A DNA stretch of 64,000 nt from the IMG/VR virus record IMGVR_UViG_3300012931_000759, positions 186,001 to 250,000 of that record. The stretch is one strand, 5' to 3'. Positions 1,921-48,416 of this stretch are shown here, one piece after another. The notes beneath the pieces are model-generated. The model was not told where the DNA came from and did no database searches. It was given only the letters and a program-made list of their open reading frames with translations. The translations under genes were made by a program, and so were the position numbers. Within the stretch, counting starts at the first letter, position 1. Each line of letters opens with the position of its first letter.

Positions 1921-2080
1921 AGCGGCATCTACTTGATTACCAACCGCGTGAATAGAAAACAGTACATTATCGCAGCAAAACACACGGACTAGACAAAACA
2001 GAAGATGTCGCTAGCGTACAAAGGCAAATGTCCGGATCCCAGACCAGACAGAGGATGAGCACAGCCAGAAGCAGTTTTAT
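1921..2080 (+). pseudogene. Decayed GIY-YIG/NUMOD3 homing endonuclease remnant
   Basis: Reads SGIYLITNRVNRKQYI..KHTD*TKQKMSLAYKGK, then TRQRMSTARS in another frame; resembles 23250..23969. Confidence 0.7.
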
Positions 2081-2188
2081 GTAAAGTACCGAAACGCACG
2101 GTCCAGTTAGAATTTTCTCCATTCTTTGCGGTAGGTTGTAATATTGCGTTTTCCGCATTTTTTCCTCCTGACACGAAGTCCCGAAAAT

Positions 2189-2206
2189 CTATCAATATTT
2201 TCTCAT
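2189..2206 (+). promoter_or_regulatory. Putative phage late promoter CTATCAAT-N7-CAT
   Basis: CTATCAAT ATTTTCT CAT, intergenic, just upstream of ATG 2213; motif recurs 7 times. Confidence 0.7.
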
Positions 2207-2212
2207 AAAGGC

Positions 2213-2806
2213 ATGGATCGAATCCCCCGCACAGCTTGGTCTACCCAGCGATCGGTCCCCTTCTCTGAAGAAGAGAAGCAGGCCGCGCGCACAGCCATGG
2301 CCAAACTCGGGAACTTTCTCGGGCAGTTGTGGGCCGCCCAGCAGCACAGCGAGCGGCTGATGGACGTCCTCAACAAGGCGCCCGATACGCCGCCCGAACA
2401 GTTGTTTTCGATCCGTCATCTCATCAGGAAGTTCAGGGACGAGGTCCGCCAGCACTTCACGCAGCTAATTCCGGTCTTCTCTGCCGCCATCACGACGCTG
2501 AATCCGTTCGCGAAAGACACGGATACGGCTGCTATACGTGAGAGTCTCATCGACGCTATGCAGCAGCTTTCTGAGGTCATCGAGACCTACATGGAGACTT
2601 TCGAGGATTTTAATGCGCCGGACCAAATTCAGAGGCTAAAGGCTCTGTTCCAGAAGGTCAAGCAACTCTCGCAGAGTATCGAGGCGGTGATCAAGGGCAG
2701 GCTGCGCGACCATTTTGAGAAAAATATCCTGCGCCGCCAGAGGATCAGCGATCTACATAATGGCATCAGGCGCCGCGCGCGCCTGGTCGCCATGTTGGAG
2801 GGTTGA
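2213..2806 (+). CDS. Hypothetical helical head-module protein
   Basis: ORF with ATG at 2213 (MDRIPRTAW...). Confidence 0.7.
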   Translation: MDRIPRTAWSTQRSVPFSEEEKQAARTAMAKLGNFLGQLWAAQQHSERLMDVLNKAPDTPPEQLFSIRHLIRKFRDEVRQHFTQLIPVFSAAITTLNPFAKDTDTAAIRESLIDAMQQLSEVIETYMETFEDFNAPDQIQRLKALFQKVKQLSQSIEAVIKGRLRDHFEKNILRRQRISDLHNGIRRRARLVAMLEG

Positions 2807-2808
2807 AG

Positions 2809-2979
2809 ATGGGTTTTATCAAAAATGCAGATGGCGACCAGACTAATACCATCGAGCACGTTTTCGAAGGTGTGGATGAGGTGTTGGAGGAGATTGCCAG
2901 CCATGCGGCTCCGGACGAGCCCGCCCTCGTTGTGGATATGTCGAGTTTTGAATCTCTAGATAAAAAAGAATCCAACTAA
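2809..2979 (+). CDS. Small acidic protein (56 aa), not in the ORF track
   Basis: GGAGG RBS; MGFIKNADGD...KKESN*; TAATG overlap with next gene. Confidence 0.55.
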   Translation: MGFIKNADGDQTNTIEHVFEGVDEVLEEIASHAAPDEPALVVDMSSFESLDKKESN

Positions 2980-3644
2980 TGGGTTATAAGGATAGGGTCT
3001 GTAGCCGCTACAGTAAAACATACACGCCGCGCGCATCGAATCAGCAATATTGCGCTGACCTAGAATGTAGACGTTGGAACAGGAACCGTATCAACAGACA
3101 AGCGCGTAAACATCCAGAGAAAGAGGTTTGCTGTACCGTTTGTGGCACTGTGTTCTCGACTAGTAGGTGGAAACAGCAGCAATGTTGCGGAAAGGAATGT
3201 CGCAGTTTGTTTATGCGACTTAAGAACAAGGAATATTATGAGCAAGTTTTGAGACTGCGTAATAGTCATCTAAAAAGAGGTTATTCGTATCCGCAGAAAT
3301 ACATTTTCGAAGCAGTTTTCAAGCTGTTTCCAAATCTGGTCTGGCAATACGACGACCGTTCGACATTACGCAATCCGAACACAGGATATCCACTTGAATT
3401 GGATATCTGGTGTCCCGAAAAACGTTTTGCGATAGAATATGATGGGGAACATCATTTCTCCCCGAAACAGTTCGGACAGAAGGGGTTTGACTATGTGCGT
3501 CTCTTAGACGCCACCAAGACTAAGGAATGTGTCGACAAGAATATAGTCCTGTTGCGCATCTCCTGCCGGGATGACTGGCGCAACAAGGAATGGTTAGCTC
3601 AAAAGGTCGGAGAGTGCTTGAATGGCGTTTACCAAGTTTGCTGA
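2979..3644 (+). CDS. Free-standing homing endonuclease (Zn-finger plus Vsr/PD-(D/E)XK-like)
   Basis: CxxC motifs; LELDIWCPEKRFAIEYDGEHHF; low GC; overlaps the protease start. Confidence 0.75.
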   Translation: MGYKDRVCSRYSKTYTPRASNQQYCADLECRRWNRNRINRQARKHPEKEVCCTVCGTVFSTSRWKQQQCCGKECRSLFMRLKNKEYYEQVLRLRNSHLKRGYSYPQKYIFEAVFKLFPNLVWQYDDRSTLRNPNTGYPLELDIWCPEKRFAIEYDGEHHFSPKQFGQKGFDYVRLLDATKTKECVDKNIVLLRISCRDDWRNKEWLAQKVGECLNGVYQVC

Positions 3645-6600
3645 ATCTAGATTCACAGTTGAGGAGATTCATGCTCCCGAGGCGGCGCTGTCGGATTCTG
3701 TAGTATTGGACAGGTTCACTAAATATGCCAAGACTTTAAGGGCTATTGCCCCAAAAGCCAAGGATTTTCTTTACTTCTCCTGTGTGATGCTCCACTCCGA
3801 CACAGCTGCACTGGTTAATCAAGACACAGGAGAACCAATCCTTGGTAAAGATGGAAAACCTGTTACGGCGGAATGGGATATCAATCCGAAAACAGGATCA
3901 TATAAATGGAAATGTTCAGATCATAATATAAAACCTTTCAAAAATAACAACGGAGATATTTTCGTTGAATCTGAATTAAAAAAGGCTTATCGTAAATGGG
4001 TTGAAAAGCCATTGTGCCAGGATCATCAAAGTAACACGGTCGATGGTGTGCGCGGACTGATTTTGGATACTTATTGGGATGATAAGAGAAAACGTGTAAT
4101 AGGTTTGTGCGCCCTTGACCGAAAAAACTATCCCGATCTTGCACGAAAGGTTGAGAGCGGATATGCAACAAATGTATCTATGGGCACTGCCGTGGGTAGG
4201 TCGATTTGCTACGATTGTGGCAATGTGGCTAAAACCGAGGCCGAATACTGTGCCTGCGTGCGTGCCAAGAGGACCTACGGTGAAATCAACATTGATTTAT
4301 CTCCCATTGAATTGAGTCTGGTGGTTACTGGTGCCGATCCTCGTGCTAAGTTGCGCCATATCATCGCGAGCCTTAACGGATACGCGCAGCAGAAACAGGC
4401 TAGGATCGAGGAGCTACAGCGGGCCGGATGCGTAACTCCCGGCGAGCTGGACAGTCTGCGGGCAGAGGTCGAGGGGCTGCGTCGTCAGCTCTACGAGATT
4501 TCTAGGCTCCATGCACAGGCGGCGCTAGATCCGAGCCACGGGGCAGTGCTCCGCAATCTGCTTGAGATTATCAGCAATCCTGCCACTTCCGCCGAGACCA
4601 AAGCGTTAGCCGACAAGCAGATGAAGGAACTGCTGGGCGGCGTCGCCTCTCCGGAGGATCTGGCGAAGATGGAAACGCCCGCGCCTGCACCTACGGCGGC
4701 CGCCGAGGACGGCGACGGCGTGGAGGGGGCAGGGTGCGAACGAGTAGAAGATAAGCCCGAGGGACAGATGGTTTCCGACGTGGAGCCGCCCTACGGGCTC
4801 GCTGGAAACAAGGCCATGACCGGGGGACGAGGAAGGTCGTATTCCGAGGACCCCGAATCCAGTGGACCGCCACCTTGGTCCCTTGACGGGCGGGAAACCC
4901 GTCTTGCCAGCGGAAACCTGGATGCCCAAATCCTGGCAGTCCAGGAGTGGCTAGATTCAATGCAGACGACCCTGCAGAAGATGGCTGCGGACATCCAGGC
5001 GTCAGCAAACAGGACAAACCCGAAGGAGGAGAAGAACATGTCCGATCTGAAGGAGAGGGCTCGCGCCCGTCGCGCGGCGTTCGAGAAGAACGCCTATCAC
5101 CAGGGGGGAGGCGGTGTCAACGAACCGCAGACCTACCCCAAAGAGGAAGCGGACAAGATCCGCAACACCCAGGACAAGCAGATGGTTGGCGAGGGCATGG
5201 AACCCGGCAACGACGGCTTGGCCGGAAGTGATCTAGCTCTGAAGAAGAAACTGCTCCGTGCCGATCTCGAGGAACGCCGCCTGCGTCGGCATGCACTACT
5301 CGCCAAGGGCGAGGAGATCGTCAAGGTCAAGGCGCCGGACGGAACCGACGTGTCCCTCACAAAGGGCGCCGACGGCAAGTGGACGGTCGCCCCAGCTCAG
5401 AAGGACGACGATCCTGGACTCGAGGTGAATGCGTATTTCCAGGGCGGCGGCGGTGTCAACGAACCGCAGACCTACCCCAAAGAGGAAGCGGACAAGATCC
5501 GCAACATCCAGGACAAACAAATGGTCGGTGAAGGGATGGAGCCCGGCAATGATGGCTTGGCCGGAGACGACCTAGCTTTGAAGAAGAAACTGCTCCGTGC
5601 TGAGCTGACCGCCAAGTTCATCAAGGTCTATGCTGGCCAGGACAAGGCCGAAGTCGACCGGAAGCGCAGCCGCTGGGAAGTCTACGCTGGCGGCCAGAAG
5701 CTCTTCGAGGCGACCGGCGAGCAGATCTATGACGAGGGCGATCTTGTCGACGATAACTACTGGAACCATCTGTCCTCTGCGGACTACGGTCGACGCATTA
5801 TGTCCGCCATTCGCCGCGAGGGTTTGGATAAGACCGCATACCTGCTGACCGGCAAGGTCGTGACGGCCCAGGAACCGGCTCTGCCACCTCCAGGTATGCC
5901 GCCCGCCCCGATGGCCTCCCCGGCCGAGGCTCCCAAGCCTCCCGAGGAGGAGCTTAAGAGCGAAGAGAAGCCGGGCGCCGAGTCCGCCAAGAACAGGGTT
6001 GACGAGGCCCTGGCCGATGTCGAGAAAGCCCTCGGCGACTTGAAAGATGTCCTCAAGGAGGAAGGTGAGTCGAAGGAAGGTGGTAAGGAGGAGCTTCCGC
6101 CGATCGAAATTGGCGAGGCTGCTAAGACCGCCTCTGACATCCGCGCCGCTCTCGATGATAGCGGCGACGAGCTAGCCATTCTTTCCGAGGTTCTCGGCAA
6201 GAGGATCGAGGCTGGCATGACGGCCGGAACCGAGATGGACGAGCTGTTGAAACTGGCCGGCGAATCCCTCGAGGCGAGCGCCGAGATCGTCCGCGAGGCC
6301 GCACTCGTGGTCGAGGCTAAGAAGGGCAAAATGCCCGAGGGCCTGAAGAAGGCGCTCGAGAAGAAGGAGAATGGCGGGAAAGACGAGGAGGACGAGGAAA
6401 AGGGCAAAAAGAAGGAGAAGGAGAAAGGCAAAAAGGACAAGAAGGAAGAGAAGGGTGAGAAGAAAGAGAAGGGCAAAAAGGACGAGAAAGAGGAGAAGGG
6501 CGAGGAGAAAGACGAGAAAGAGGAGAAGGAAGAGAAGAAGTCCGAGGCCGAACTCGTTCTGGAGAAGATGCTGAAAGCACGCGCCGCCAAGCGGCGTGAG

Positions 6601-18324: not shown

Positions 18325-19911
18325 ATGAGAACGAGGGAAAAAATCGATGACGCCATTCTGGCGGAGGACATCAGGAGCCTCTCGGAAAAGATCGGCAGAG
18401 TGCCGAGGCAGGAAGATTACAAGAAGGACGGAACCTTCGGCTTGAACACTCTGCTGCTCCGGAAGTCTTGGAACCAATGGCTGACGGAGATTTTTGGTCA
18501 GATCAATGAGGTTCGCAAAACCAAGCGAGAGAGGGCAACTGCTCTGGAGGTTTTGCTGGATATCAAATGCGTGTGTGACAAGTTGGGCAAACCTCCAACG
18601 CAGGCGGAGTACAAAGTGGCAGGCAAACACCCTTTGGGAACCATACTGCGGCACCGGAAATGGAACGATTGGTTGAAATTGGCCACTGGTTCCGTGAACT
18701 ACAACCGCACGGAGGACAGCAAAACCAGGAGGATAGGCGACCAGGATCTTGCCGATGATGTGCGGCGGGTGGCGACGGAACTGGGGCACGCCCCGACTCG
18801 GAGCGAATACAACGAGCATGGTCGCCATTCCTCCGACACCATTGTGGTTAGGATGCCTTGGATGGAATTCATCCAGAAGGTTTGTGGGCTTGAGCCATCA
18901 AAAATTGCGTCCGTCAACAGGTCGAAGGCGACCAACGAGGAACTGCTGGCCCAGTTGAAAAGATTGGCGACGACTTTAGATCGAACGCCCCTGAAGGAAG
19001 ATCTGGGTGGTCAAAACGGATTCTGCTACACCGCATATGTTCGTGCCTTTGGCACTTTCGGCAATGCCCTTGTTGCCGCTGGATTGATCAATCCCCTGAA
19101 CCGCTATTGTGTTCCTCGCGAGGAACTGGTTGTCGAACTGAAGCGGGTGTATGGTCTGCTCGGCCACACGCCGTCCGAAACGGAGTTCCTGGAAAACAGC
19201 CCCATACGCAGCAATGGTTCGATATATTCCGAGTTCGGCTCCTGGACAAAGGCGTTCCTTGCTGCAGGTATTCCAGTTATAAAGGCCAGAAATATCTCCG
19301 TGGACGACATCAAGATCGCCTTGCAGAAATGGCATACTGCCAACAATGGCGACGATTCCTGCCTCGAATACTGGAAAATAAGAAAAGCAAAGAAAAACAA
19401 ACAGTTTCCATATTCGCCAAACTCCGTCAGCGCGAAGTTCCATCCACTATCCTGGGAAGAGATTATGCGCGAATGCGGATTCCCAAACTATGTAACCAAG
19501 GATCGTTATGTTACAGGGCGTAAACGCGGCGACCACACCGGAGCCGACGGCAACGAGTACCTATCCTCCCTGGAGAAGGAGATTGGCGATTTCCTGTTCG
19601 AATTGAAGGGCTCGGGAAATATCCTGGACTACGAATATGAGGCCAAAATATGCCCCGACAAGAACTGGACATGCGACTTCAAGGTGACGATGCGCGATGG
19701 CAGGGCTGTCTGGCTGGAGGCCGACGGCCTCCGCAACAACCGCAACCGACCCTACTCCTCGGGCAACAACGAAAAGATCGCATTCTATGGCAACAACGGA
19801 ATGGATTGTCGCATAGTGTCGTATTCCTCTCCCAATATCCGATGGGCGGTGGCCGACAGCCTAGCCTTGCCATTGCCGGTCCCCACCAATCCGCGAAAGG
19901 AAAACTTATGA
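18325..19911 (+). CDS. Protein with ~6 homing-endonuclease-associated helical repeats and a C-terminal PD-(D/E)XK nuclease
   Basis: Repeated L..V...LG..P...EY...FG.W..AL units; SSLEKEI...YEYE...TCDF...WLEADG. Confidence 0.75.
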   Translation: MRTREKIDDAILAEDIRSLSEKIGRVPRQEDYKKDGTFGLNTLLLRKSWNQWLTEIFGQINEVRKTKRERATALEVLLDIKCVCDKLGKPPTQAEYKVAGKHPLGTILRHRKWNDWLKLATGSVNYNRTEDSKTRRIGDQDLADDVRRVATELGHAPTRSEYNEHGRHSSDTIVVRMPWMEFIQKVCGLEPSKIASVNRSKATNEELLAQLKRLATTLDRTPLKEDLGGQNGFCYTAYVRAFGTFGNALVAAGLINPLNRYCVPREELVVELKRVYGLLGHTPSETEFLENSPIRSNGSIYSEFGSWTKAFLAAGIPVIKARNISVDDIKIALQKWHTANNGDDSCLEYWKIRKAKKNKQFPYSPNSVSAKFHPLSWEEIMRECGFPNYVTKDRYVTGRKRGDHTGADGNEYLSSLEKEIGDFLFELKGSGNILDYEYEAKICPDKNWTCDFKVTMRDGRAVWLEADGLRNNRNRPYSSGNNEKIAFYGNNGMDCRIVSYSSPNIRWAVADSLALPLPVPTNPRKENL

Positions 19912-22970: not shown

Positions 22971-23246
22971 ATGAGTCGCTACAACTATTTCGGTACCATC
23001 CTGATCGACGGTTACGCGTTCCCGGAGATTCCGCAGGCCGTTTTCGATTTCAATTCTCAAGGGTTCAAATTCCTGAACCGCGGCGCGTATCCCATCGAGT
23101 ATAGTTTTGATGGAACTCATCTTCATGGTGATCTGAATCCAGCCGATGCCTCCAAGGAAATGTCGTTCGATGGGCGTTGTGAGTGTAAGGTGTTTTTCCG
23201 AGCCAAAGATGGTTACGGCATTTGTAGGGTGGAAGCCTGGAGATAG
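22971..23246 (+). CDS. Small beta-rich putative virion protein
   Basis: GGAGG RBS; 2 DGY. Confidence 0.7.
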   Translation: MSRYNYFGTILIDGYAFPEIPQAVFDFNSQGFKFLNRGAYPIEYSFDGTHLHGDLNPADASKEMSFDGRCECKVFFRAKDGYGICRVEAWR

Positions 23247-23249
23247 ACG

Positions 23250-23969
23250 ATGGCCAGTGGAGTCTACGCCATAACGAACACTGTGAGCCTGAAAAGGTAC
23301 ATAGGTAGTTCGGACAATATAGATCAGCGATGGCGCCAACACAGACGAAAGTTGCGGAAAAATGGGCATTCTAAACCCCATCTTCAGGCTGCCTGGAACA
23401 AATACGGCGAACGGACCTTCAGGTTTGAAGTTTTGTGCTTGACTGATCAACCTTGCCAAGTAGAGCAGGCATTTTTGACAGTCTGGAAACCCGAATACAA
23501 TATTTCGGTGGGCGCCGATGCGTGGGCGAACCTTTACTGTGGAGCATCGGGCCAAATTGGGGCATCTCGCAGGGGATGTGTCCATTCCATAGAAGCCAAA
23601 GTAAAGATGTCGGCTTCTCACAAAGGAAAAAACTTGTCTGCCGAAACGCGTGCCAAGATTTCTTCGGCAAACAAAGGAAAAGTTCGTTCAGAAGAACAGC
23701 GTGCGAACATAAGCAAATCCAAAAAAGGTAAGCCTTCACTTTTCAAGGGCCAAACCCTTTTTGACGAGACGCGTGCCAAAATTTCGGCAGACAAGATAGG
23801 CAAGCCTGGTCATCCGCACACGGAAGAACATCGCGCCTCCATGTACAGGGACAACAATTCATCCAAACGTGCCGATGTCCACGCCAAGATCAACACAGCA
23901 CAGAAGGCTGCTTGGGCTCGTCGTAAAGCGGCACAAGGGAATGCGAATACTCTGGAGACGAAAACATGA
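23250..23969 (+). CDS. GIY-YIG homing endonuclease with NUMOD3 repeats
   Basis: GVYAITN...YIGSS; PEYN; repeated ETRAKIS...KGK. Confidence 0.9.
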   Translation: MASGVYAITNTVSLKRYIGSSDNIDQRWRQHRRKLRKNGHSKPHLQAAWNKYGERTFRFEVLCLTDQPCQVEQAFLTVWKPEYNISVGADAWANLYCGASGQIGASRRGCVHSIEAKVKMSASHKGKNLSAETRAKISSANKGKVRSEEQRANISKSKKGKPSLFKGQTLFDETRAKISADKIGKPGHPHTEEHRASMYRDNNSSKRADVHAKINTAQKAAWARRKAAQGNANTLETKT

Positions 23970-24274
23970 TCCGTCGTGCCGACGGCTTGACCGTCTATTC
24001 CGGTTCGCATGTCGGCTCGCGCGGTTCGCTGGCTTCTATACGGCACACTGGCCCTGAGGACTTCTCGGAGGGCGTTCCCGAGGAGGAACGGGAGTGGGAG
24101 GGCGGTGTCCGGGCGGCCATGCTTACCAGAGAGGCCTCGTTCGGTGCGCGGTGGCACGGTGATTGGGAATCGTGGGACGAGCCCGATGGTCAGGAAATTG
24201 CCCTGACAGCCAGGCTTTGGGGGACAATATACAGGCGTCCAGAGCCGGTGGAGCCACCATTCGGAAGGAGATGA
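23966..24274 (+). CDS. Hypothetical protein
   Basis: ATGA-coupled ORF. Confidence 0.55.
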   Translation: MIRRADGLTVYSGSHVGSRGSLASIRHTGPEDFSEGVPEEEREWEGGVRAAMLTREASFGARWHGDWESWDEPDGQEIALTARLWGTIYRRPEPVEPPFGRR

Positions 24275-24277
24275 AAG

Positions 24278-24499
24278 ATGAAGATCCTGGACACCAGGAA
24301 AGTGAAAGAGCAGCGCAAGATCGAAGCCAAGTCCGAGAATGAGCTACGCGAATTCAAGGAATGGCTTAACAGTGCCACGCCCCTCGATGCCGAGGACATC
24401 AAGAACCTCGGGAACCTGTGGAATGGCCATTCTACCTACAATCTGGATGAGATCAAGGCAATGGCGGACTCCCTCCGCAAACAGACAGGCATCGCCTAG
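24278..24499 (+). CDS. Hypothetical protein
   Basis: AGGAG RBS; MKILDTRK. Confidence 0.65.
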   Translation: MKILDTRKVKEQRKIEAKSENELREFKEWLNSATPLDAEDIKNLGNLWNGHSTYNLDEIKAMADSLRKQTGIA

Positions 24500-24509
24500 G
24501 AAGAGACAG

Positions 24510-24728
24510 ATGAAGATCCTCAACACAAAACACGGGGCGGCAACCATTCGACCGCCCCTCCGGAAAGACATCCGGGAACTCGAGGCCACGACCGGCTGGA
24601 GACTCGTTCCCGACAACATGCTCATGTCCGAAATCATGTTTACCGCCATGCTCGACCTGGAGTGCGAGAATGACATGGATTTCTTTGCCTGCGTGGATGG
24701 ACTGTACACCAAGGAAGGACAGGAATGA
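24510..24728 (+). CDS. Hypothetical protein
   Basis: ATG 24510, MKILNTKH. Confidence 0.6.
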   Translation: MKILNTKHGAATIRPPLRKDIRELEATTGWRLVPDNMLMSEIMFTAMLDLECENDMDFFACVDGLYTKEGQE

Positions 24729-25051
24729 GAAAAGGAAGAGCCACCCTGGAAGATCCCCTCACCGAAGAATACGTCCGCTACCGTCTCATGGAATACGCTA
24801 AGCTCATCGGAGCCCATGAGGACCTCAAGCAGGTCTTCGCGAAATGGGACACACTCATCCCGCTGGCGCCGCCCGATGAGCGTGCGCAGATGGGGCACAT
24901 GGCAATTATGGAGGTCGAGCGCCTCCTGGATATCTATTCCGCCCAAGGCGACGGCCTCACTATCAATGGAAAGGTTGTCATACCAACCGCAAAGAAGGAA
25001 CCAGAGGCGACGCTGTACGACGTGCGCCCGGACAAGAAGGAAAACGTATGA
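24725..25051 (+). CDS. Hypothetical protein
   Basis: ATGA-coupled ORF. Confidence 0.65.
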   Translation: MRKGRATLEDPLTEEYVRYRLMEYAKLIGAHEDLKQVFAKWDTLIPLAPPDERAQMGHMAIMEVERLLDIYSAQGDGLTINGKVVIPTAKKEPEATLYDVRPDKKENV

Positions 25052-25350
25052 CTAAGTACGAGATCATCAACAACAGGTTCAACAATATCAGGTTTCTACA
25101 GCTCTTCTCCGAGCGCGAGAGCGCATGGAGACTGTATATGGCTGACCAGCGGCGTCCGGTGATCGACTGCCAACCCAACGGTAAATGGCGTTTCGGCGAT
25201 ATGATCGGGACGGTGCCCAAAGGGCACGACTGCGTCATCGAGGGCTTCGTGGTGCGTAAGGGCAGGACGGTGCGCCGCGGCAAAGTGACCCATGTGCCGA
25301 ACGGCGGCGGGGATGTGAACTACATCCTGCGCGGAAACGACGTGGGGTAA
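25048..25350 (+). CDS. Hypothetical protein
   Basis: ATGA-coupled ORF. Confidence 0.6.
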   Translation: MTKYEIINNRFNNIRFLQLFSERESAWRLYMADQRRPVIDCQPNGKWRFGDMIGTVPKGHDCVIEGFVVRKGRTVRRGKVTHVPNGGGDVNYILRGNDVG

Positions 25351-25353
25351 GGT

Positions 25354-25956
25354 ATGGAAACAGAGATTTGCGTCCAGCACGATAATGAAGAAACAATTGA
25401 AGAAACTGAGAAAACCACCGGACAATCTTGGCGCGAATATATGAGAACATATATGAGGCAGTATCGTCGAGACAATCCAGAACGGATGGCCGCAGCGCGA
25501 CGCAAACATTATCTTCGACACCAAGAGGATACAAAAGAGGCCGCTCGCACATATTACGAACAAAACAAGGACAAAATTAAGAAGCGAGTGAACGCCTATA
25601 CAGAGAAGCGGATGAAAACTGATCATGCGTTTTGTGTCAAACGCAGACTGCGCATGCGCCTTAGAACAGCACTTAAGGCTTCTTTGGAGGGACGTAAAAC
25701 TAAGAGATCCTCTGAATATGGTATAAATTACGAGAAGATTTTTCAGCATCTCGGCCCATGCCCCGGTGCTTTGTCGGACTATCACATCGATCATATCAGA
25801 CCGCTGTGTTTATTCGATTTTAATGATCCAGAGCAAATACGGGCAGCTTTTGCACCCGAAAATCATCAATGGCTTCGCAAAGAGGAAAATTTGGCGAAGC
25901 ATTGTAAAACTGCCGTTGCTGTCAATCGTGGCACAGCAGAAGGAGAAGAAGGATGA
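25354..25956 (+). CDS. HNH homing endonuclease
   Basis: YHIDHIRPL..FD......AFAPENHQWL...NL.K; basic N-terminus. Confidence 0.8.
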   Translation: METEICVQHDNEETIEETEKTTGQSWREYMRTYMRQYRRDNPERMAAARRKHYLRHQEDTKEAARTYYEQNKDKIKKRVNAYTEKRMKTDHAFCVKRRLRMRLRTALKASLEGRKTKRSSEYGINYEKIFQHLGPCPGALSDYHIDHIRPLCLFDFNDPEQIRAAFAPENHQWLRKEENLAKHCKTAVAVNRGTAEGEEG

Positions 25957-27098
25957 CTGATACAGGCAAGAGACTGACTGGCAAAGTAGTGTGGTCAAGT
26001 TAGGGCCCTTCGGCGAAGCGATTCGTCGAAAGCATCGGGTGAATTGCTGGAAACCTTAGCGCGTCATGGCGGTGGTAATCAGCAGCCAAGCCTGCGAAGC
26101 CGGTAGGAATAGCAGGAAGGTTCAGAGACCAACAAAATTCTGGAAAAAAACTCACCTTTGAGGTGTAGTGATGGATAGGATGGCAAGAGGTATTTTGGTT
26201 GGCATGGCTTTGGGCGACGGGCATATTCGTATACGACGGGATCTTCGTTATCCGAATGCGCTTCCGTCTGCCACCTTATGTGTCAAACATTGTGCTCGCC
26301 AGACAGAATATGCCGAGTACAAAGCCAATTTGCTTCATCGTATCCTTGGAGGGGCGAAGCCAAAAGTCTCGCCTTTTGACAACAGCGGGTTTCCTGGGGT
26401 TCTGTTTGCGAAAACAAACAAATATTTCAGGATATTGGGAAAGCGATTGTACCGAAATGGTCACAAGTTCATCTCTCGTCAGATTTTGGATTATCTGACG
26501 GACGAAGGGCTTGCAATTTGGTGGATGGATGATGGAAGTCTCTATATGAAAAAGAGGAATGGCATCATCCATGCGCGAGAGGGCATCTTAAGTACTTATT
26601 GTTCAAAACCGGAATACGAAACAGTTGTTGACTGGTTCAAAGATAAATATAGTATTATAGTAGCCCCCGTTGTACACAAAAGCAGTTTCAGGATTCGCAT
26701 TAATACCGCAAACCTGAAACTGCTTGTCCCGATTATCGCTCCGTATGTTGTTCCATGTTTGTCGTACAAAGTAGATATGAAGTACGACCCAGAACTTTGA
26801 CACGAGCGCCCGACATCCCTTGTGGATGAAGATATGGTCCGACACTCCGGGGAAATCCGGAGATCCGGTCTAAACAGCCGGAATAACAGATGTCAACGAC
26901 AAAAAGGGTTTTGGCTTCATCTCCCGCGATGATGGGGGGGGTGACCTCTTTGTTCACTTTAGTAATATAAATGCTGAAGGATTCAAGTCACTTACAGCCG
27001 AGCAGCTGGTGTCATTCGCCATCGGGAAGAACAACCGCGGCCCGCAGGCGATCGACGTCGAGGTGATTGGGGAGCCGGAGTCCGACTTGGACGAGTAG
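25953..27098 (+). CDS. csp: Cold-shock protein (82 aa) split by a group I intron; exons 25953-25995 and 26893-27098
   Basis: Spliced product [48 protein letters not shown]...GPQAIDV with RNP1 and RNP2. Confidence 0.92.
25996..26892 (+). ncRNA. Group I self-splicing intron (IA-like)
   Basis: 5' exon ends in U, intron ends in G; P GAATTGCTGGAAA (26041), Q AATCAGCAGCC (26077), R GGTTCAGAGACCA (~26119), S GAAGATATGGTCC (26828); P3, P7, P8, P9 pairings present. Confidence 0.92.
26168..26800 (+). CDS. Intron-encoded LAGLIDADG homing endonuclease
   Basis: [12 protein letters not shown] and [10 protein letters not shown] motifs; lies inside the intron. Confidence 0.9.
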   Translation: MMDRMARGILVGMALGDGHIRIRRDLRYPNALPSATLCVKHCARQTEYAEYKANLLHRILGGAKPKVSPFDNSGFPGVLFAKTNKYFRILGKRLYRNGHKFISRQILDYLTDEGLAIWWMDDGSLYMKKRNGIIHAREGILSTYCSKPEYETVVDWFKDKYSIIVAPVVHKSSFRIRINTANLKLLVPIIAPYVVPCLSYKVDMKYDPEL

Positions 27099-27102
27099 GC
27101 CG

Positions 27103-27636
27103 ATGGCCAGGGACAGGAAAAAGTGGCTGCGGCCCCCTAACAGGGGGCCCAGGTATCTCCTGCGTAATGTTCATCCCAAAAGGATGGACGTGATGTTGGG
27201 GGATCTGGGATATAGGATTCCGTACGGGCAGACGCGCGACATGCTGTCGCCGTCCGCGCGGTTGGATCCGTCCGCAGTCGAGCGTTCCCGTCTGAACGGG
27301 TCGATCGCCCAAAGGCTCCGCCAAGGTGTCCTGATGGAGGTGGTAGCGGTTATACCGATTCCCCCTCCGCAGGTTTCCGTGGCGGAGCCTTCCGCCATAT
27401 CCTTTCCACAGCGCACCAAATCACTTCTGGTTCCTGACGAGGGTGATCTGACGGAGAGCGTCCAGTCGGTGGTTGCCGACGAGGACACCGAACTTCTCAA
27501 GCAGATGGAGGAGGACGAGAAGGCCTTGGCTGAAGGTGAAGCTGCTGGTCTTCCTGTGACCGTTGATCCGGTTAAGGCTACGGCCGTCCTGGACAAGGTG
27601 TCCGGGGGCTGCTGCGGCGGAAAGGGAAGGAAATAG
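27103..27636 (+). CDS. Hypothetical protein
   Basis: ATG 27103; acidic C-terminal half ending GGCCGGKGRK. Confidence 0.65.
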   Translation: MARDRKKWLRPPNRGPRYLLRNVHPKRMDVMLGDLGYRIPYGQTRDMLSPSARLDPSAVERSRLNGSIAQRLRQGVLMEVVAVIPIPPPQVSVAEPSAISFPQRTKSLLVPDEGDLTESVQSVVADEDTELLKQMEEDEKALAEGEAAGLPVTVDPVKATAVLDKVSGGCCGGKGRK

Positions 27637-27678
27637 GCTGGTCTCTCTTATGATTAAGGCAGCGGCAAAGGCGGCACA

Positions 27679-27999
27679 ATGTTGAAAAAAACCGCCTGCG
27701 AGATTTGCTCTATGTCGGATCTGCGCATCATACATCGCCATCATATTATTCCACGTCCAGATCCGCGTTGCCATAATGGCTCCAACAACTTAGCTTGTTT
27801 ATGTCCCAACTGTCATTCTCTTGTCCATGCGGGTGAGATTGTGATTCTAGGTGTTTATTCTTCGACCAACGGCAGATGTCTTGTTTGGCACAACAAGAAT
27901 GAACAACCGCCACTGGCCAAAGAATGTTGGTTAGTGCGAGATAATCCGCTTGTCGTCACCCTGGGCGGTGGCGAGGATGACTTGCCGGACAAGGAATAA
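27679..27999 (+). CDS. HNH endonuclease
   Basis: CEIC...HRHHIIP...NLACLCPNCH. Confidence 0.85.
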   Translation: MLKKTACEICSMSDLRIIHRHHIIPRPDPRCHNGSNNLACLCPNCHSLVHAGEIVILGVYSSTNGRCLVWHNKNEQPPLAKECWLVRDNPLVVTLGGGEDDLPDKE

Positions 28000-48079: not shown

Positions 48080-48416
48080 TAGCAACGGGAGTTACAACGG
48101 CGTACAGTACCCATCGCGTAAATGGAAACTCGTCCTACTGGTCGTGATCCTGGCGACCATTGGCGCTTTTCTGCCGCCGCTCATCAGTGCGTGGCTGCTG
48201 GGTGCCGAGAAGCCTATGGTGCTTTTGTCCGGCACCGAGTGGGTCAGCGTGATCACCTTGAGCGTGAGCGCATATTTTGGTGCCAACGTCTGGCAGAAAC
48301 ATGTCAAGAAGAGGCACCAGCTGGACCTTGAGGCCAGCGGCGTCGTGGGCGATGCGACCGAGCCGGCGGGCGGCGACGACGACAAGGAAGAGGACGACAG
48401 TGGAAAAGAGGCCTGA
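48069..48416 (+). CDS. Holin-like membrane protein
   Basis: SRKW followed by two hydrophobic helices and a charged C-terminus. Confidence 0.55.
   Translation: MKDNSNGSYNGVQYPSRKWKLVLLVVILATIGAFLPPLISAWLLGAEKPMVLLSGTEWVSVITLSVSAYFGANVWQKHVKKRHQLDLEASGVVGDATEPAGGDDDKEEDDSGKEA

What the first reader, a model, noticed from the sequence alone, without database searches (positions are those of the whole stretch)
25953..27098. Group I intron interrupting a phage cold-shock protein gene
Seen: removing 25996-26892 joins TGG T|TC AAC to restore the conserved W-F-N just before RNP1 (KGFGFI). P3 TCGGGTG (26035)/CGCCCGA (26807), P7 GACCA/TGGTC, P8 CATCC/GGATG and P9 are present. The LAGLIDADG ORF is looped out of a P7.1 stem (CAAAATTCTGG/CCAGAACTTTG). 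Known: phage group I introns usually sit in DNA metabolism, terminase, lysin or structural genes and mostly carry HNH or GIY-YIG ORFs; I do not know of csp as a host gene. Inference: because CSPs are RNA chaperones, the product could affect its own splicing, giving a feedback or temperature-sensitive switch.
Basis: partly seen in the sequence, partly recalled or inferred. Interest (0 to 1): 0.8.

Follow-up and report, generated by a model that had tools for sequence, protein, structure and literature searches.

The report
Self-splicing intron in phage cold-shock gene
A giant phage's cold-shock protein gene is cut in two by an 897-base mobile group I intron that carries its own DNA-cutting enzyme; it is a normal selfish intron, but no report of one in this kind of gene turned up, and there is no evidence yet that it acts as a regulatory switch.

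Summary
Exon 1 (25953-25995) and exon 2 (26893-27098) join into an 82-aa CspA-family protein. That protein is 75/82 identical to uninterrupted orthologs in related huge phages and has the same length. DNA alignments to two intronless relatives break exactly at 25995|26893. The 897-nt insert matches Rfam Intron_gpI over the whole model (44.9 bits, E 6.6e-10). P3, P7, P7.1 and P8 all show compensatory changes across about 20 related introns.

Two more csp introns were found. One is the same intron at the same site in a second sample. The other is a homologous intron 17 nt downstream in an unrelated phage. Between the two same-site copies the intron is much less diverged than the flanking exon (dS 0.36 vs 1.06), and about a dozen orthologs lack the intron, which points to lateral spread by homing.

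Related introns sit in capsid, thyX and UDG genes, and the closest cultured-phage cores in terminase and RNR genes. No paper reporting a csp intron was found. The chaperone-feedback idea is untested. Verdict: a real new member of a known kind, of moderate interest.

The parts
25953..25995 (+). csp exon 1: ATG plus 14 codons plus the first base of Phe15. It ends in the U that forms the P1 wobble pair. The Shine-Dalgarno AAGGAG lies at 25940-25945.
   Evidence: It aligns to the N-terminus of the intronless orthologs L109, L206 and L207.
25996..26892 (+). Group I intron, 897 nt, phase 1, G+C 46.7% against 56.2% for the window. It ends in the terminal G26892.
   Evidence: Rfam RF00028 at 44.9 bits, E 6.6e-10, full model. 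It is a precise insertion relative to L206/L207.
25993..26007 (+). P1 and the internal guide region: GGU|C (25993-25996) pairs with GGCC (26004-26007). GUUAG (25999-26003) can pair with exon 2 UCAAC as P10, 4 of 5 pairs.
   Evidence: Exhaustive pairing search. This is weak: only 3 exon pairs.
26009..26030 (+). P2 hairpin, 9 bp (26009-26017 with 26022-26030), loop GCGA.
   Evidence: Minimum-energy fold of the ORF-deleted construct.
26035..26041 (+). P3 5' strand UCGGGUG, pairing with 26807-26813.
   Evidence: 7-bp pairing is kept with more than 10 different sequences in related introns.
26045..26118 (+). P4-P5-P6 domain (GAATTGCTGG ... AATCAGCAGCC ... GCAGGAAGG).
   Evidence: Rfam alignment, fold, conserved blocks in the family.
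26119..26131 (+). J6/7 plus the P7 5' strand (GGTTCAGA-GACCA). P7 26127-26131 pairs with 26835-26839.
   Evidence: The window has GACCA/TGGTC where the family has GACTA/TAGTC, a change on both sides.
26133..26143 (+). P7.1 5' strand, pairing with 26789-26799. This helix closes the loop that holds the endonuclease gene.
   Evidence: 10 of 11 pairs. Equivalent 9-12 bp stems of unrelated sequence occur in about 20 relatives.
26171..26800 (+). Homing endonuclease gene, 209 aa from ATG 26171 (GTG 26168 is also possible), I-SceI-type two-motif LAGLIDADG. The Shine-Dalgarno GAGGTG at 26160-26165 lies inside a small hairpin at 26153-26165. The stop TGA 26798-26800 lies in the P7.1 3' strand.
   Evidence: Pfam PF03161 E 5.9e-25. 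phrog_11023. PDB I-SceI E 3e-21. Motif residues G16 D17 G18 and D121 D122 G123 are invariant. dN/dS is 0.19 against L188.
26789..26892 (+). Intron 3' core: P7.1 3' strand, P3 3' strand (26807-26813), P8 (26814-26828), J8/7 plus P7 3' strand (26829-26839), P9 (26845-26862), extra hairpin P9.1 (26864-26882), and the conserved tail ATAACAGATG.
   Evidence: It is 93.5% identical to L188, with a compensatory A-U to G-C change in P8.
26893..27098 (+). csp exon 2: last two bases of Phe15, then RNP1 (KGFGFI), RNP2 (LFVHF), an acidic tail and the stop codon.
   Evidence: Pfam CSD 77.4 bits. phrog_729. dN/dS is 0.13 against L188.

Best explanation
This is a mobile group I intron. It appears to be IA-like, with an extra helix between P7 and P3'. 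It is inserted after the first base of codon 15 of the cold-shock protein gene of an uncultured 340-kb myovirus-type phage.

After transcription the RNA is expected to fold into the P1-P9 core. A free guanosine would attack after U25995, and the terminal G26892 would then direct exon ligation. That restores the [11 protein letters not shown] strand and gives a normal 82-aa CSP.

The ORF in the P7.1 loop encodes an I-SceI-family LAGLIDADG endonuclease. It is expected to cut intronless csp alleles of co-infecting relatives at or near GTAGTGTGGT^TCAACGACAAAAA. Repair from the intron-bearing copy would then spread the intron (homing).

The intron sits where it does because the RNP1-coding stretch is the most conserved DNA in the gene, not because the host protein is an RNA chaperone.

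Shown: the structure, the exact boundaries, intact ORFs, patchy distribution and discordant divergence. Inferred: splicing activity, endonuclease activity and the target site.
For: (1) The whole Rfam group I model matches, E 6.6e-10. It is the only hit in the window at E 3.4e-8.

(2) P3, P7, P7.1 and P8 keep pairing through different sequences in about 20 related introns. This includes a two-sided change in P7 in the window itself and in P8 between the window and L188.

(3) blastn against intronless relatives L206 and L207 stops at 25995 and resumes at 26893, matching subject positions 4043 and 4044.

(4) The predicted product is 75/82 identical to uninterrupted orthologs P0019 and P0020, with the same length and no gap at the junction.

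(5) The endonuclease is intact. Both LAGLIDADG motifs are invariant across 10 relatives, the I-SceI match is E 3e-21, and dN/dS is 0.19.

(6) Mobility signature:
- Thirteen uninterrupted csp relatives were retrieved (P0019-P0031), including the intronless orthologs P0019-P0028; only the window and L188 carry this intron.
- The window's exon 2 is 88% identical to intronless L206 but only 77.6% identical to intron-bearing L188, while the intron is 89-93% identical between the window and L188.
- Third-codon-position differences are 36/196 in the endonuclease against 27/67 in exon 2, Fisher p = 4.7e-4.
- The intron's G+C is 47% against 56% for the window.

(7) Exon 2 is under purifying selection (dN/dS 0.13) and is free of stops in both intron-bearing copies.

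(8) A homologous intron with a 39%-identical endonuclease sits 17 nt downstream in the csp of an unrelated phage (L013). It has a 9-bp P1 and a P10 that define its splice sites.
Against: - No RNA data exist, so splicing is inferred.
- P1 is short: 3 exon pairs plus 1 intron pair. P10 has a mismatch.
- The Rfam score (44.9) is under the 50-bit gathering threshold, plausibly because of the 700-nt ORF insertion.
- The guanosine-binding site in P7 was not examined.
- The endonuclease's activity and target are inferred from family membership only.
- L188 is a 949-bp fragment that lacks the intron's 5' half and exon 1. The 'same site' statement for it therefore rests on the 3' junction only.
- Part of the low dN/dS in exon 2 may predate intron arrival.
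Confidence: 0.9

Rival explanations
1. Regulatory intron. The CSP product is an RNA chaperone. It would help or hinder folding of its own intron-containing pre-mRNA, making CSP output autoregulated or temperature-dependent.
For: CspA-family proteins are general RNA chaperones, and another chaperone (StpA) promotes td group I intron splicing (PMC3017892, PMC11587861). P1 in the window is unusually short, so splicing could be sensitive to folding conditions. Two separate insertion sites in csp genes (window and L013) show the gene was invaded twice.
Against: Nothing in the sequence is specific to this idea. Members of the same intron and endonuclease family sit in capsid, thyX and UDG genes that have no RNA-chaperone role. 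Most orthologous csp genes lack the intron, so it is dispensable for csp function. Both insertion sites lie in the most conserved coding stretch, the usual homing-endonuclease target choice. The papers read do not report CspA acting on group I splicing.
Confidence: 0.08
2. Decayed intron. The ribozyme no longer splices, and csp in this phage is a dead gene kept only as flanking DNA for a selfish or domesticated endonuclease.
For: Weak P1. Rfam score below the gathering threshold. No expression data.
Against: Every core helix is intact, and changes are compensatory. Both exons are free of stops and frameshifts, and exon 2 has dN/dS 0.13 between the two intron-bearing copies. The start codon and Shine-Dalgarno sequence are kept. 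The endonuclease is itself under purifying selection.
Confidence: 0.04
3. Not an intron. The insert is instead an assembly chimera, an insertion sequence, or an intein-like in-frame element.
For: The source is a single metagenomic contig.
Against: The same arrangement occurs in an independent sample (L188, 86.6% identical over 949 nt). The insert has stops in the csp frame, so it is not an intein. It has no transposase, and no terminal repeats were noticed (not searched for). It does have a full group I core.
Confidence: 0.01

Closest known systems
Phage group I introns with homing endonuclease genes (T4 td/I-TevI, nrdB, nrdD; SPO1 and Bastillevirinae DNA polymerase introns, PMC11878797)
   Same: Self-splicing group I core in a phage protein-coding gene. 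An endonuclease ORF is looped out of a peripheral helix. Distribution among related phages is patchy. One Nitunavirus DNA polymerase intron carries an endonuclease of the same PHROG, phrog_11023.
   Different: The host gene is a cold-shock protein, not a DNA-metabolism, terminase, lysin or structural gene. The endonuclease is LAGLIDADG rather than the commoner HNH or GIY-YIG. The ORF lies between P7 and P3' (P7.1).
I-SceI and the omega intron of yeast mitochondrial LSU rRNA
   Same: The endonuclease family profile matches I-SceI chains at E about 3e-21 over nearly full length. It is a monomeric two-motif LAGLIDADG enzyme encoded inside a group I intron.
   Different: It is a phage, not an organelle, and the host is a protein-coding gene, not rRNA. 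Identity is low (the match is at profile level). The target site is unknown.
Uncultured-phage relatives of the same intron and endonuclease family (L002, L006-L012 and others)
   Same: The core blocks are shared: GAATTGCTGG, AATCAGCAGCC, GGTTCAGAGAC, AAGATATAGTC and the 3' tail ATAACAnnnTG. The endonuclease sits in the same P7.1 loop and is 35-55% identical.
   Different: Their hosts are major capsid (L002, L010, L012), thyX (L006, and by exon sequence L007-L008) and UDG (L009) genes. Only the window, L188 and L013 are in csp.
Unannotated introns in Vibrio phage 1.187.O terminase and Shewanella phage 1/4 RNR alpha genes
   Same: These are the closest DNA-level matches to the P3-P6 core in cultured phages (73-78% over about 75-100 nt). 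The genes are annotated as split CDS pieces.
   Different: The host genes differ, and no related LAGLIDADG ORF was found there.
Cellular CspA/CspB cold-shock proteins
   Same: The spliced product has a full CSD with RNP1 and RNP2.
   Different: It is phage-encoded, split by an intron, and has no long 5' UTR thermosensor. The weak Rfam cspA hit (20.8 bits against a 78-bit threshold) lies over coding sequence.

Membership tests
Group I intron (Rfam RF00028) | Conserved catalytic core P3-P9 in canonical order | tested here: met
   Full-length model match 1-253, 44.9 bits, E 6.6e-10. This is below the 50-bit gathering score. The helices are recovered by the fold of the ORF-deleted RNA.
Group I intron (Rfam RF00028) | Helices supported by compensatory changes in relatives | tested here: met
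   P3, P7, P7.1 and P8 stay paired with different sequences in about 20 relatives. P8 shows a two-sided change between the window and L188.
Group I intron (Rfam RF00028) | 5' splice site after a U that forms a U-G wobble in P1 with an internal guide | tested here: inconclusive
   U25995 can pair with G26005, but P1 has only 3 exon pairs plus 1 intron pair. The relative L013 has a clear 9-bp P1.
Group I intron (Rfam RF00028) | Intron ends in G (omega G) | tested here: met
   G26892 lies within the family-conserved tail ATAACAnnnTG.
Group I intron (Rfam RF00028) | Removal restores the host gene exactly | tested here: met
   Alignments to intronless L206 and L207 break at 25995|26893. The product is 75/82 identical to P0019 with no gap.
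Group I intron (Rfam RF00028) | Guanosine-dependent self-splicing | not testable with these tools
   Needs an in vitro transcript or RNA data.
Subgroup IA of group I introns | Extra helices P7.1/P7.2 between P7 and P3' | tested here: inconclusive
   One helix (P7.1) is present and covaries. A second helix and other subgroup markers were not assessed. No subgroup-specific model was available.
LAGLIDADG_2 / I-SceI family homing endonuclease | Pfam PF03161 above its curated cut-off | tested here: met
   88.6 bits against a cut-off of 25, covering profile positions 1-167 of 168.
LAGLIDADG_2 / I-SceI family homing endonuclease | Two LAGLIDADG motifs, each with a catalytic acidic residue | tested here: met
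   LGDG (D17) and WMDDG (D121/D122) are invariant in 10 relatives.
LAGLIDADG_2 / I-SceI family homing endonuclease | Site-specific cleavage of the intronless allele | not testable with these tools
   The candidate empty site is known from L206/L207.
CspA-family cold-shock domain protein | CSD (PF00313) with RNP1 and RNP2 motifs | tested here: met
   Exon 2 alone scores 77.4 bits over profile positions 9-65. KGFGFI and LFVHF are present, and exon 1 supplies the missing first strand.

The most novel reading that the evidence does not exclude
The intron and its host protein form a loop. The phage CSP, as an RNA chaperone, would alter folding of the weak-P1 intron in its own pre-mRNA, so that CSP production becomes self-limiting or cold-responsive. 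Repeated invasion of csp genes (two insertion sites) would then reflect a benefit rather than target conservation alone.
Probability: 0.08. Interest if true: 0.7.

Novelty: new member of a known kind. Interest (0 to 1): 0.4.

Why it matters
It adds cold-shock protein genes to the list of phage genes colonised by group I introns. It also shows that the RNP1-coding stretch has been hit at two different positions by one intron and endonuclease family.

The locus comes with natural intron-plus and intron-minus alleles, an exact empty site, and a small I-SceI-type enzyme. That makes a ready system for studying homing among huge phages and a possible source of a new meganuclease specificity.

It is also a caution for annotation. 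Gene callers will report this csp as a truncated ORF or miss it entirely.

The chaperone-feedback idea is cheap to test, but nothing here supports it yet.

Tried and rejected
- Default Rfam scan at gathering thresholds gave no hit. The intron only appears with E-value reporting, because the ORF insertion lowers the score.
- A second intron around the HNH gene at 27679-27999 was considered, because that protein aligns with the intronic HNH of L013 beyond the HNH motif. It was rejected. The DNA there has none of the core blocks and Rfam finds nothing.
- Other introns of this family elsewhere in the window: none. All four core blocks occur together only at 26041-26839.
- Alternative splice sites:
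  - In the window, only TGGT|...G|TCAAC keeps the frame.
  - In L013, a 5' site at the window's position would give a CSD two residues short and lacks a good P1. The K-G|Y site has a 9-bp P1 and a P10.
- Rfam did not detect the L013 intron, which has two large ORF insertions. Its identity rests on shared core blocks and pairings.
- Searches for further csp introns:
  - 80 viral csp loci: only the window and L013 are split.
  - 80 metagenome relatives of the endonuclease: none new.
  - 13 bacterial or archaeal genome relatives: none.
  - GenBank phages: only distant crAss-like endonuclease relatives and no DNA match to the exons.
- The 200-aa ORF upstream of csp first looked like a window-specific insertion relative to L109. 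It is shared with L206 and L207, so that idea was dropped.
- The promoter and terminator scan gave nothing interpretable around the gene.

Full report
**Source and setting**

The window is part of IMGVR_UViG_3300012931_000759 (Ga0153915_10000003), a 340,392-bp contig. Nearly all long ORFs are on the + strand. They include a tail sheath, virion proteins and endolysin-like domains. No cultured phage is similar at the DNA level, and only remote protein similarity exists. It is therefore an uncultured huge myovirus-type phage.

**The observation**

- The csp start codon is at 25953, preceded by AAGGAG.
- Exon 1 ends with TGG T at 25995.
- The insert runs from 25996 to 26892 and ends in G.
- Exon 2 starts with TC AAC at 26893 and stops at 27096-27098.
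- Joining the exons gives an 82-aa protein that reads through [11 protein letters not shown]. Without removal, the frame stops after 16 codons.
- Exon 2 alone matches Pfam CSD positions 9-65 of 66 (77.4 bits). The missing first strand is exactly what exon 1 supplies.

**Is the insert a group I intron?**

The default Rfam scan reported nothing. With E-value reporting, RF00028 matches 25986-26862 over the complete model. The score is 44.9 bits, with E 6.6e-10 for the region and 3.4e-8 for the whole window, where it is the only hit. The shortfall against the 50-bit threshold goes with a roughly 700-nt insertion between the P7 5' strand and the P3 3' strand.

Folding an ORF-deleted construct recovers P2 (9 bp), P3, P4-P6, P7.1, P8, P9 and a further 3' hairpin.

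P1 is the weak element. U25995 can pair with G26005, flanked by two G-C pairs in the exon and one C-G pair in the intron. GUUAG at 25999-26003 can pair with the first five bases of exon 2 as P10, with one mismatch.

**Comparative support for the structure**

The intron ORF's relatives were collected from IMG/VR, JGI/ENA metagenomes and GTDB genomes. In about 25 distinct loci the same core blocks flank the endonuclease gene. In about 20 of these the anchors could be placed cleanly, and they show the following.
- P3 is a 7-bp helix with more than ten different sequence versions.
- P7.1 is a 9-12 bp helix of essentially unrelated sequence in each lineage.
- P8 covaries likewise.
- P7 is GACTA/TAGTC in most, but GACCA/TGGTC in the window, a change on both strands.

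**Exact boundaries from intronless relatives**

A search with exon 2 found thirteen uninterrupted csp relatives of 73-82 aa, including the orthologs P0019-P0028, from related large phage contigs. The predicted spliced product is 75/82 identical to P0019 and P0020, with the same length and no gap.

At the DNA level, blastn of the window against L206 (NCBI CACVFB010000001.1, 305.7 kb) and L207 stops at window 25995 and resumes at 26893. These correspond to adjacent subject bases 4043 and 4044. The empty site reads GTAGTGTGGT^TCAACGACAAAAA.

A more distant relative (L109, 442 kb) is also intronless and syntenic from 23966 to 27984.

**The endonuclease**

- The ORF (ATG 26171, or GTG 26168, to 26800) matches LAGLIDADG_2 at 88.6 bits and phrog_11023.
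- As a family profile it matches I-SceI structures at E about 3e-21.
- Both motifs (LGDG with D17, WMDDG with D121/D122) are invariant in ten relatives.
- Its Shine-Dalgarno sequence (26160-26165) lies in a small hairpin at 26153-26165.
- Its stop codon lies in the P7.1 3' strand.

**More csp introns**

L188 is a 949-bp contig from another sample (IMG 3300056895). It is colinear with window 26208-27156 at 86.6% identity. It covers the endonuclease gene, the intron 3' core, the same 3' junction and csp exon 2.

L013 comes from a different 75-kb phage contig. It has a csp split at a different place, between Gly17 and Tyr18 (K-G|Y-G-F-I), which is 17 nt downstream of the window's site. Its features are:
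- a 1265-nt intron (1697-2961) with the same core blocks and the same 3' tail;
- a 39%-identical LAGLIDADG gene in P7.1;
- an additional HNH gene between the 5' splice site and the guide sequence;
- a guide UAGCUCUUU just 5' of P3 that forms a 9-bp P1 with AAAGGGU|UA, while the preceding CAUA pairs with the start of exon 2.

Among 80 viral csp loci, only these are split.

**Evidence for mobility**

- The window's exon 2 is 88% identical to intronless L206 but only 77.6% identical to intron-bearing L188.
- The endonuclease gene and intron 3' core of the window and L188 are 88.8% and 93.5% identical.
- Synonymous divergence is 0.36 in the endonuclease against 1.06 in exon 2.
- Third-codon-position differences are 36/196 against 27/67 (Fisher p = 4.7e-4).
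- The intron's G+C is 47% against 56% for the window.

Together with the patchy distribution, this is the expected signature of homing into diverged alleles. Both coding regions are under purifying selection (dN/dS 0.19 and 0.13).

**Host-gene novelty**

Relatives of this intron and endonuclease interrupt major capsid, thyX and UDG genes. The closest core matches in cultured phages lie in a terminase gene and an RNR alpha gene.

Five full-text literature searches found no report of an intron in a csp gene. A 2025 survey of Bastillevirinae introns does not mention cold shock. Absence from the searchable library is not proof, but csp appears to be an unreported host.

**The feedback hypothesis**

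CspA-family proteins are general RNA chaperones, and StpA aids td intron splicing (PMC3017892, PMC11587861). The idea is therefore reasonable, and the short P1 leaves room for condition-dependent splicing.

Nothing in the sequence singles it out, however.
- The same intron family lives in genes unrelated to RNA folding.
- Most orthologous csp genes lack the intron.
- Both insertion sites fall in the most conserved stretch of the gene, which is the usual target choice of homing endonucleases.

I rate it at about 8%.

**Verdict**

This is a real, apparently functional and recently mobile group I intron with an I-SceI-type endonuclease, in a host gene not previously noted. It is a new member of a known kind, of moderate interest.

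Noticed in passing
window 18325-19911, 23250-23969, 27679-27999: The 10 kb around csp is rich in free-standing homing-endonuclease-type genes. One is a 528-aa protein with four HNH_repeat units (E 4.6e-50). One is a GIY-YIG plus NUMOD3 protein. One is a 106-aa HNH protein. The GIY-YIG gene is absent at the syntenic position in L207 (window 23083-23991 against L207 1385-1585), and synteny with L109 ends at its 3' edge.
   Followed up: partly
L013 1697-2961; L002 about 2284-3627: Some relatives are double-endonuclease introns. An HNH gene lies between the 5' splice site and the guide/P3 and reads into the P3-P7 core. A LAGLIDADG gene lies in P7.1. In L002 (a capsid gene) the two are in one stop-free frame.
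   Followed up: partly
L191-L193 (Pyrinomonadaceae / Blastocatellia MAGs), also L034, L044, L048: A related LAGLIDADG-bearing group I intron (Rfam 48.3 bits in L191). Its 3' exon looks like the variable arm, T-arm (GTAAG TTCGAGT CTTAC) and acceptor strand of a class II tRNA or tmRNA. ARAGORN does not call a gene. It may be an intron-split tRNA-like gene in Acidobacteria.
   Followed up: partly
window 26153-26165: A small hairpin CACCT-TTG-AGGTG contains the endonuclease gene's Shine-Dalgarno sequence. It may limit translation of the endonuclease from the unspliced RNA.
   Followed up: no
window 48178-48271: ARAGORN calls a 94-nt tRNA-His with anticodon ATG. Both the length and the anticodon are unusual. 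It may be a false call or an odd phage tRNA.
   Followed up: no
window 25354-25956: A 200-aa ORF whose stop overlaps the csp start (ATGA). It has only a weak endonuclease VII PHROG match (E 9e-4), an HNH-like C-terminal motif by eye, and no Pfam hit. It is present upstream of csp in L206 and L207 but absent in L109.
   Followed up: partly
L204 (Vibrio phage 1.187.O, MG592553.1 62385-64223) and L205 (Shewanella phage 1/4, KJ018209.1): The terminase gene is annotated as three separate CDS and the RNR alpha gene as two. Unannotated group I core sequence lies in the gaps. These are probably introns missed in the GenBank records.
   Followed up: partly
window 2001-4000: A low-G+C stretch (48% against 56%) holding two ORFs (2144-2806, 2979-3644) with no convincing family match.
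   Followed up: no
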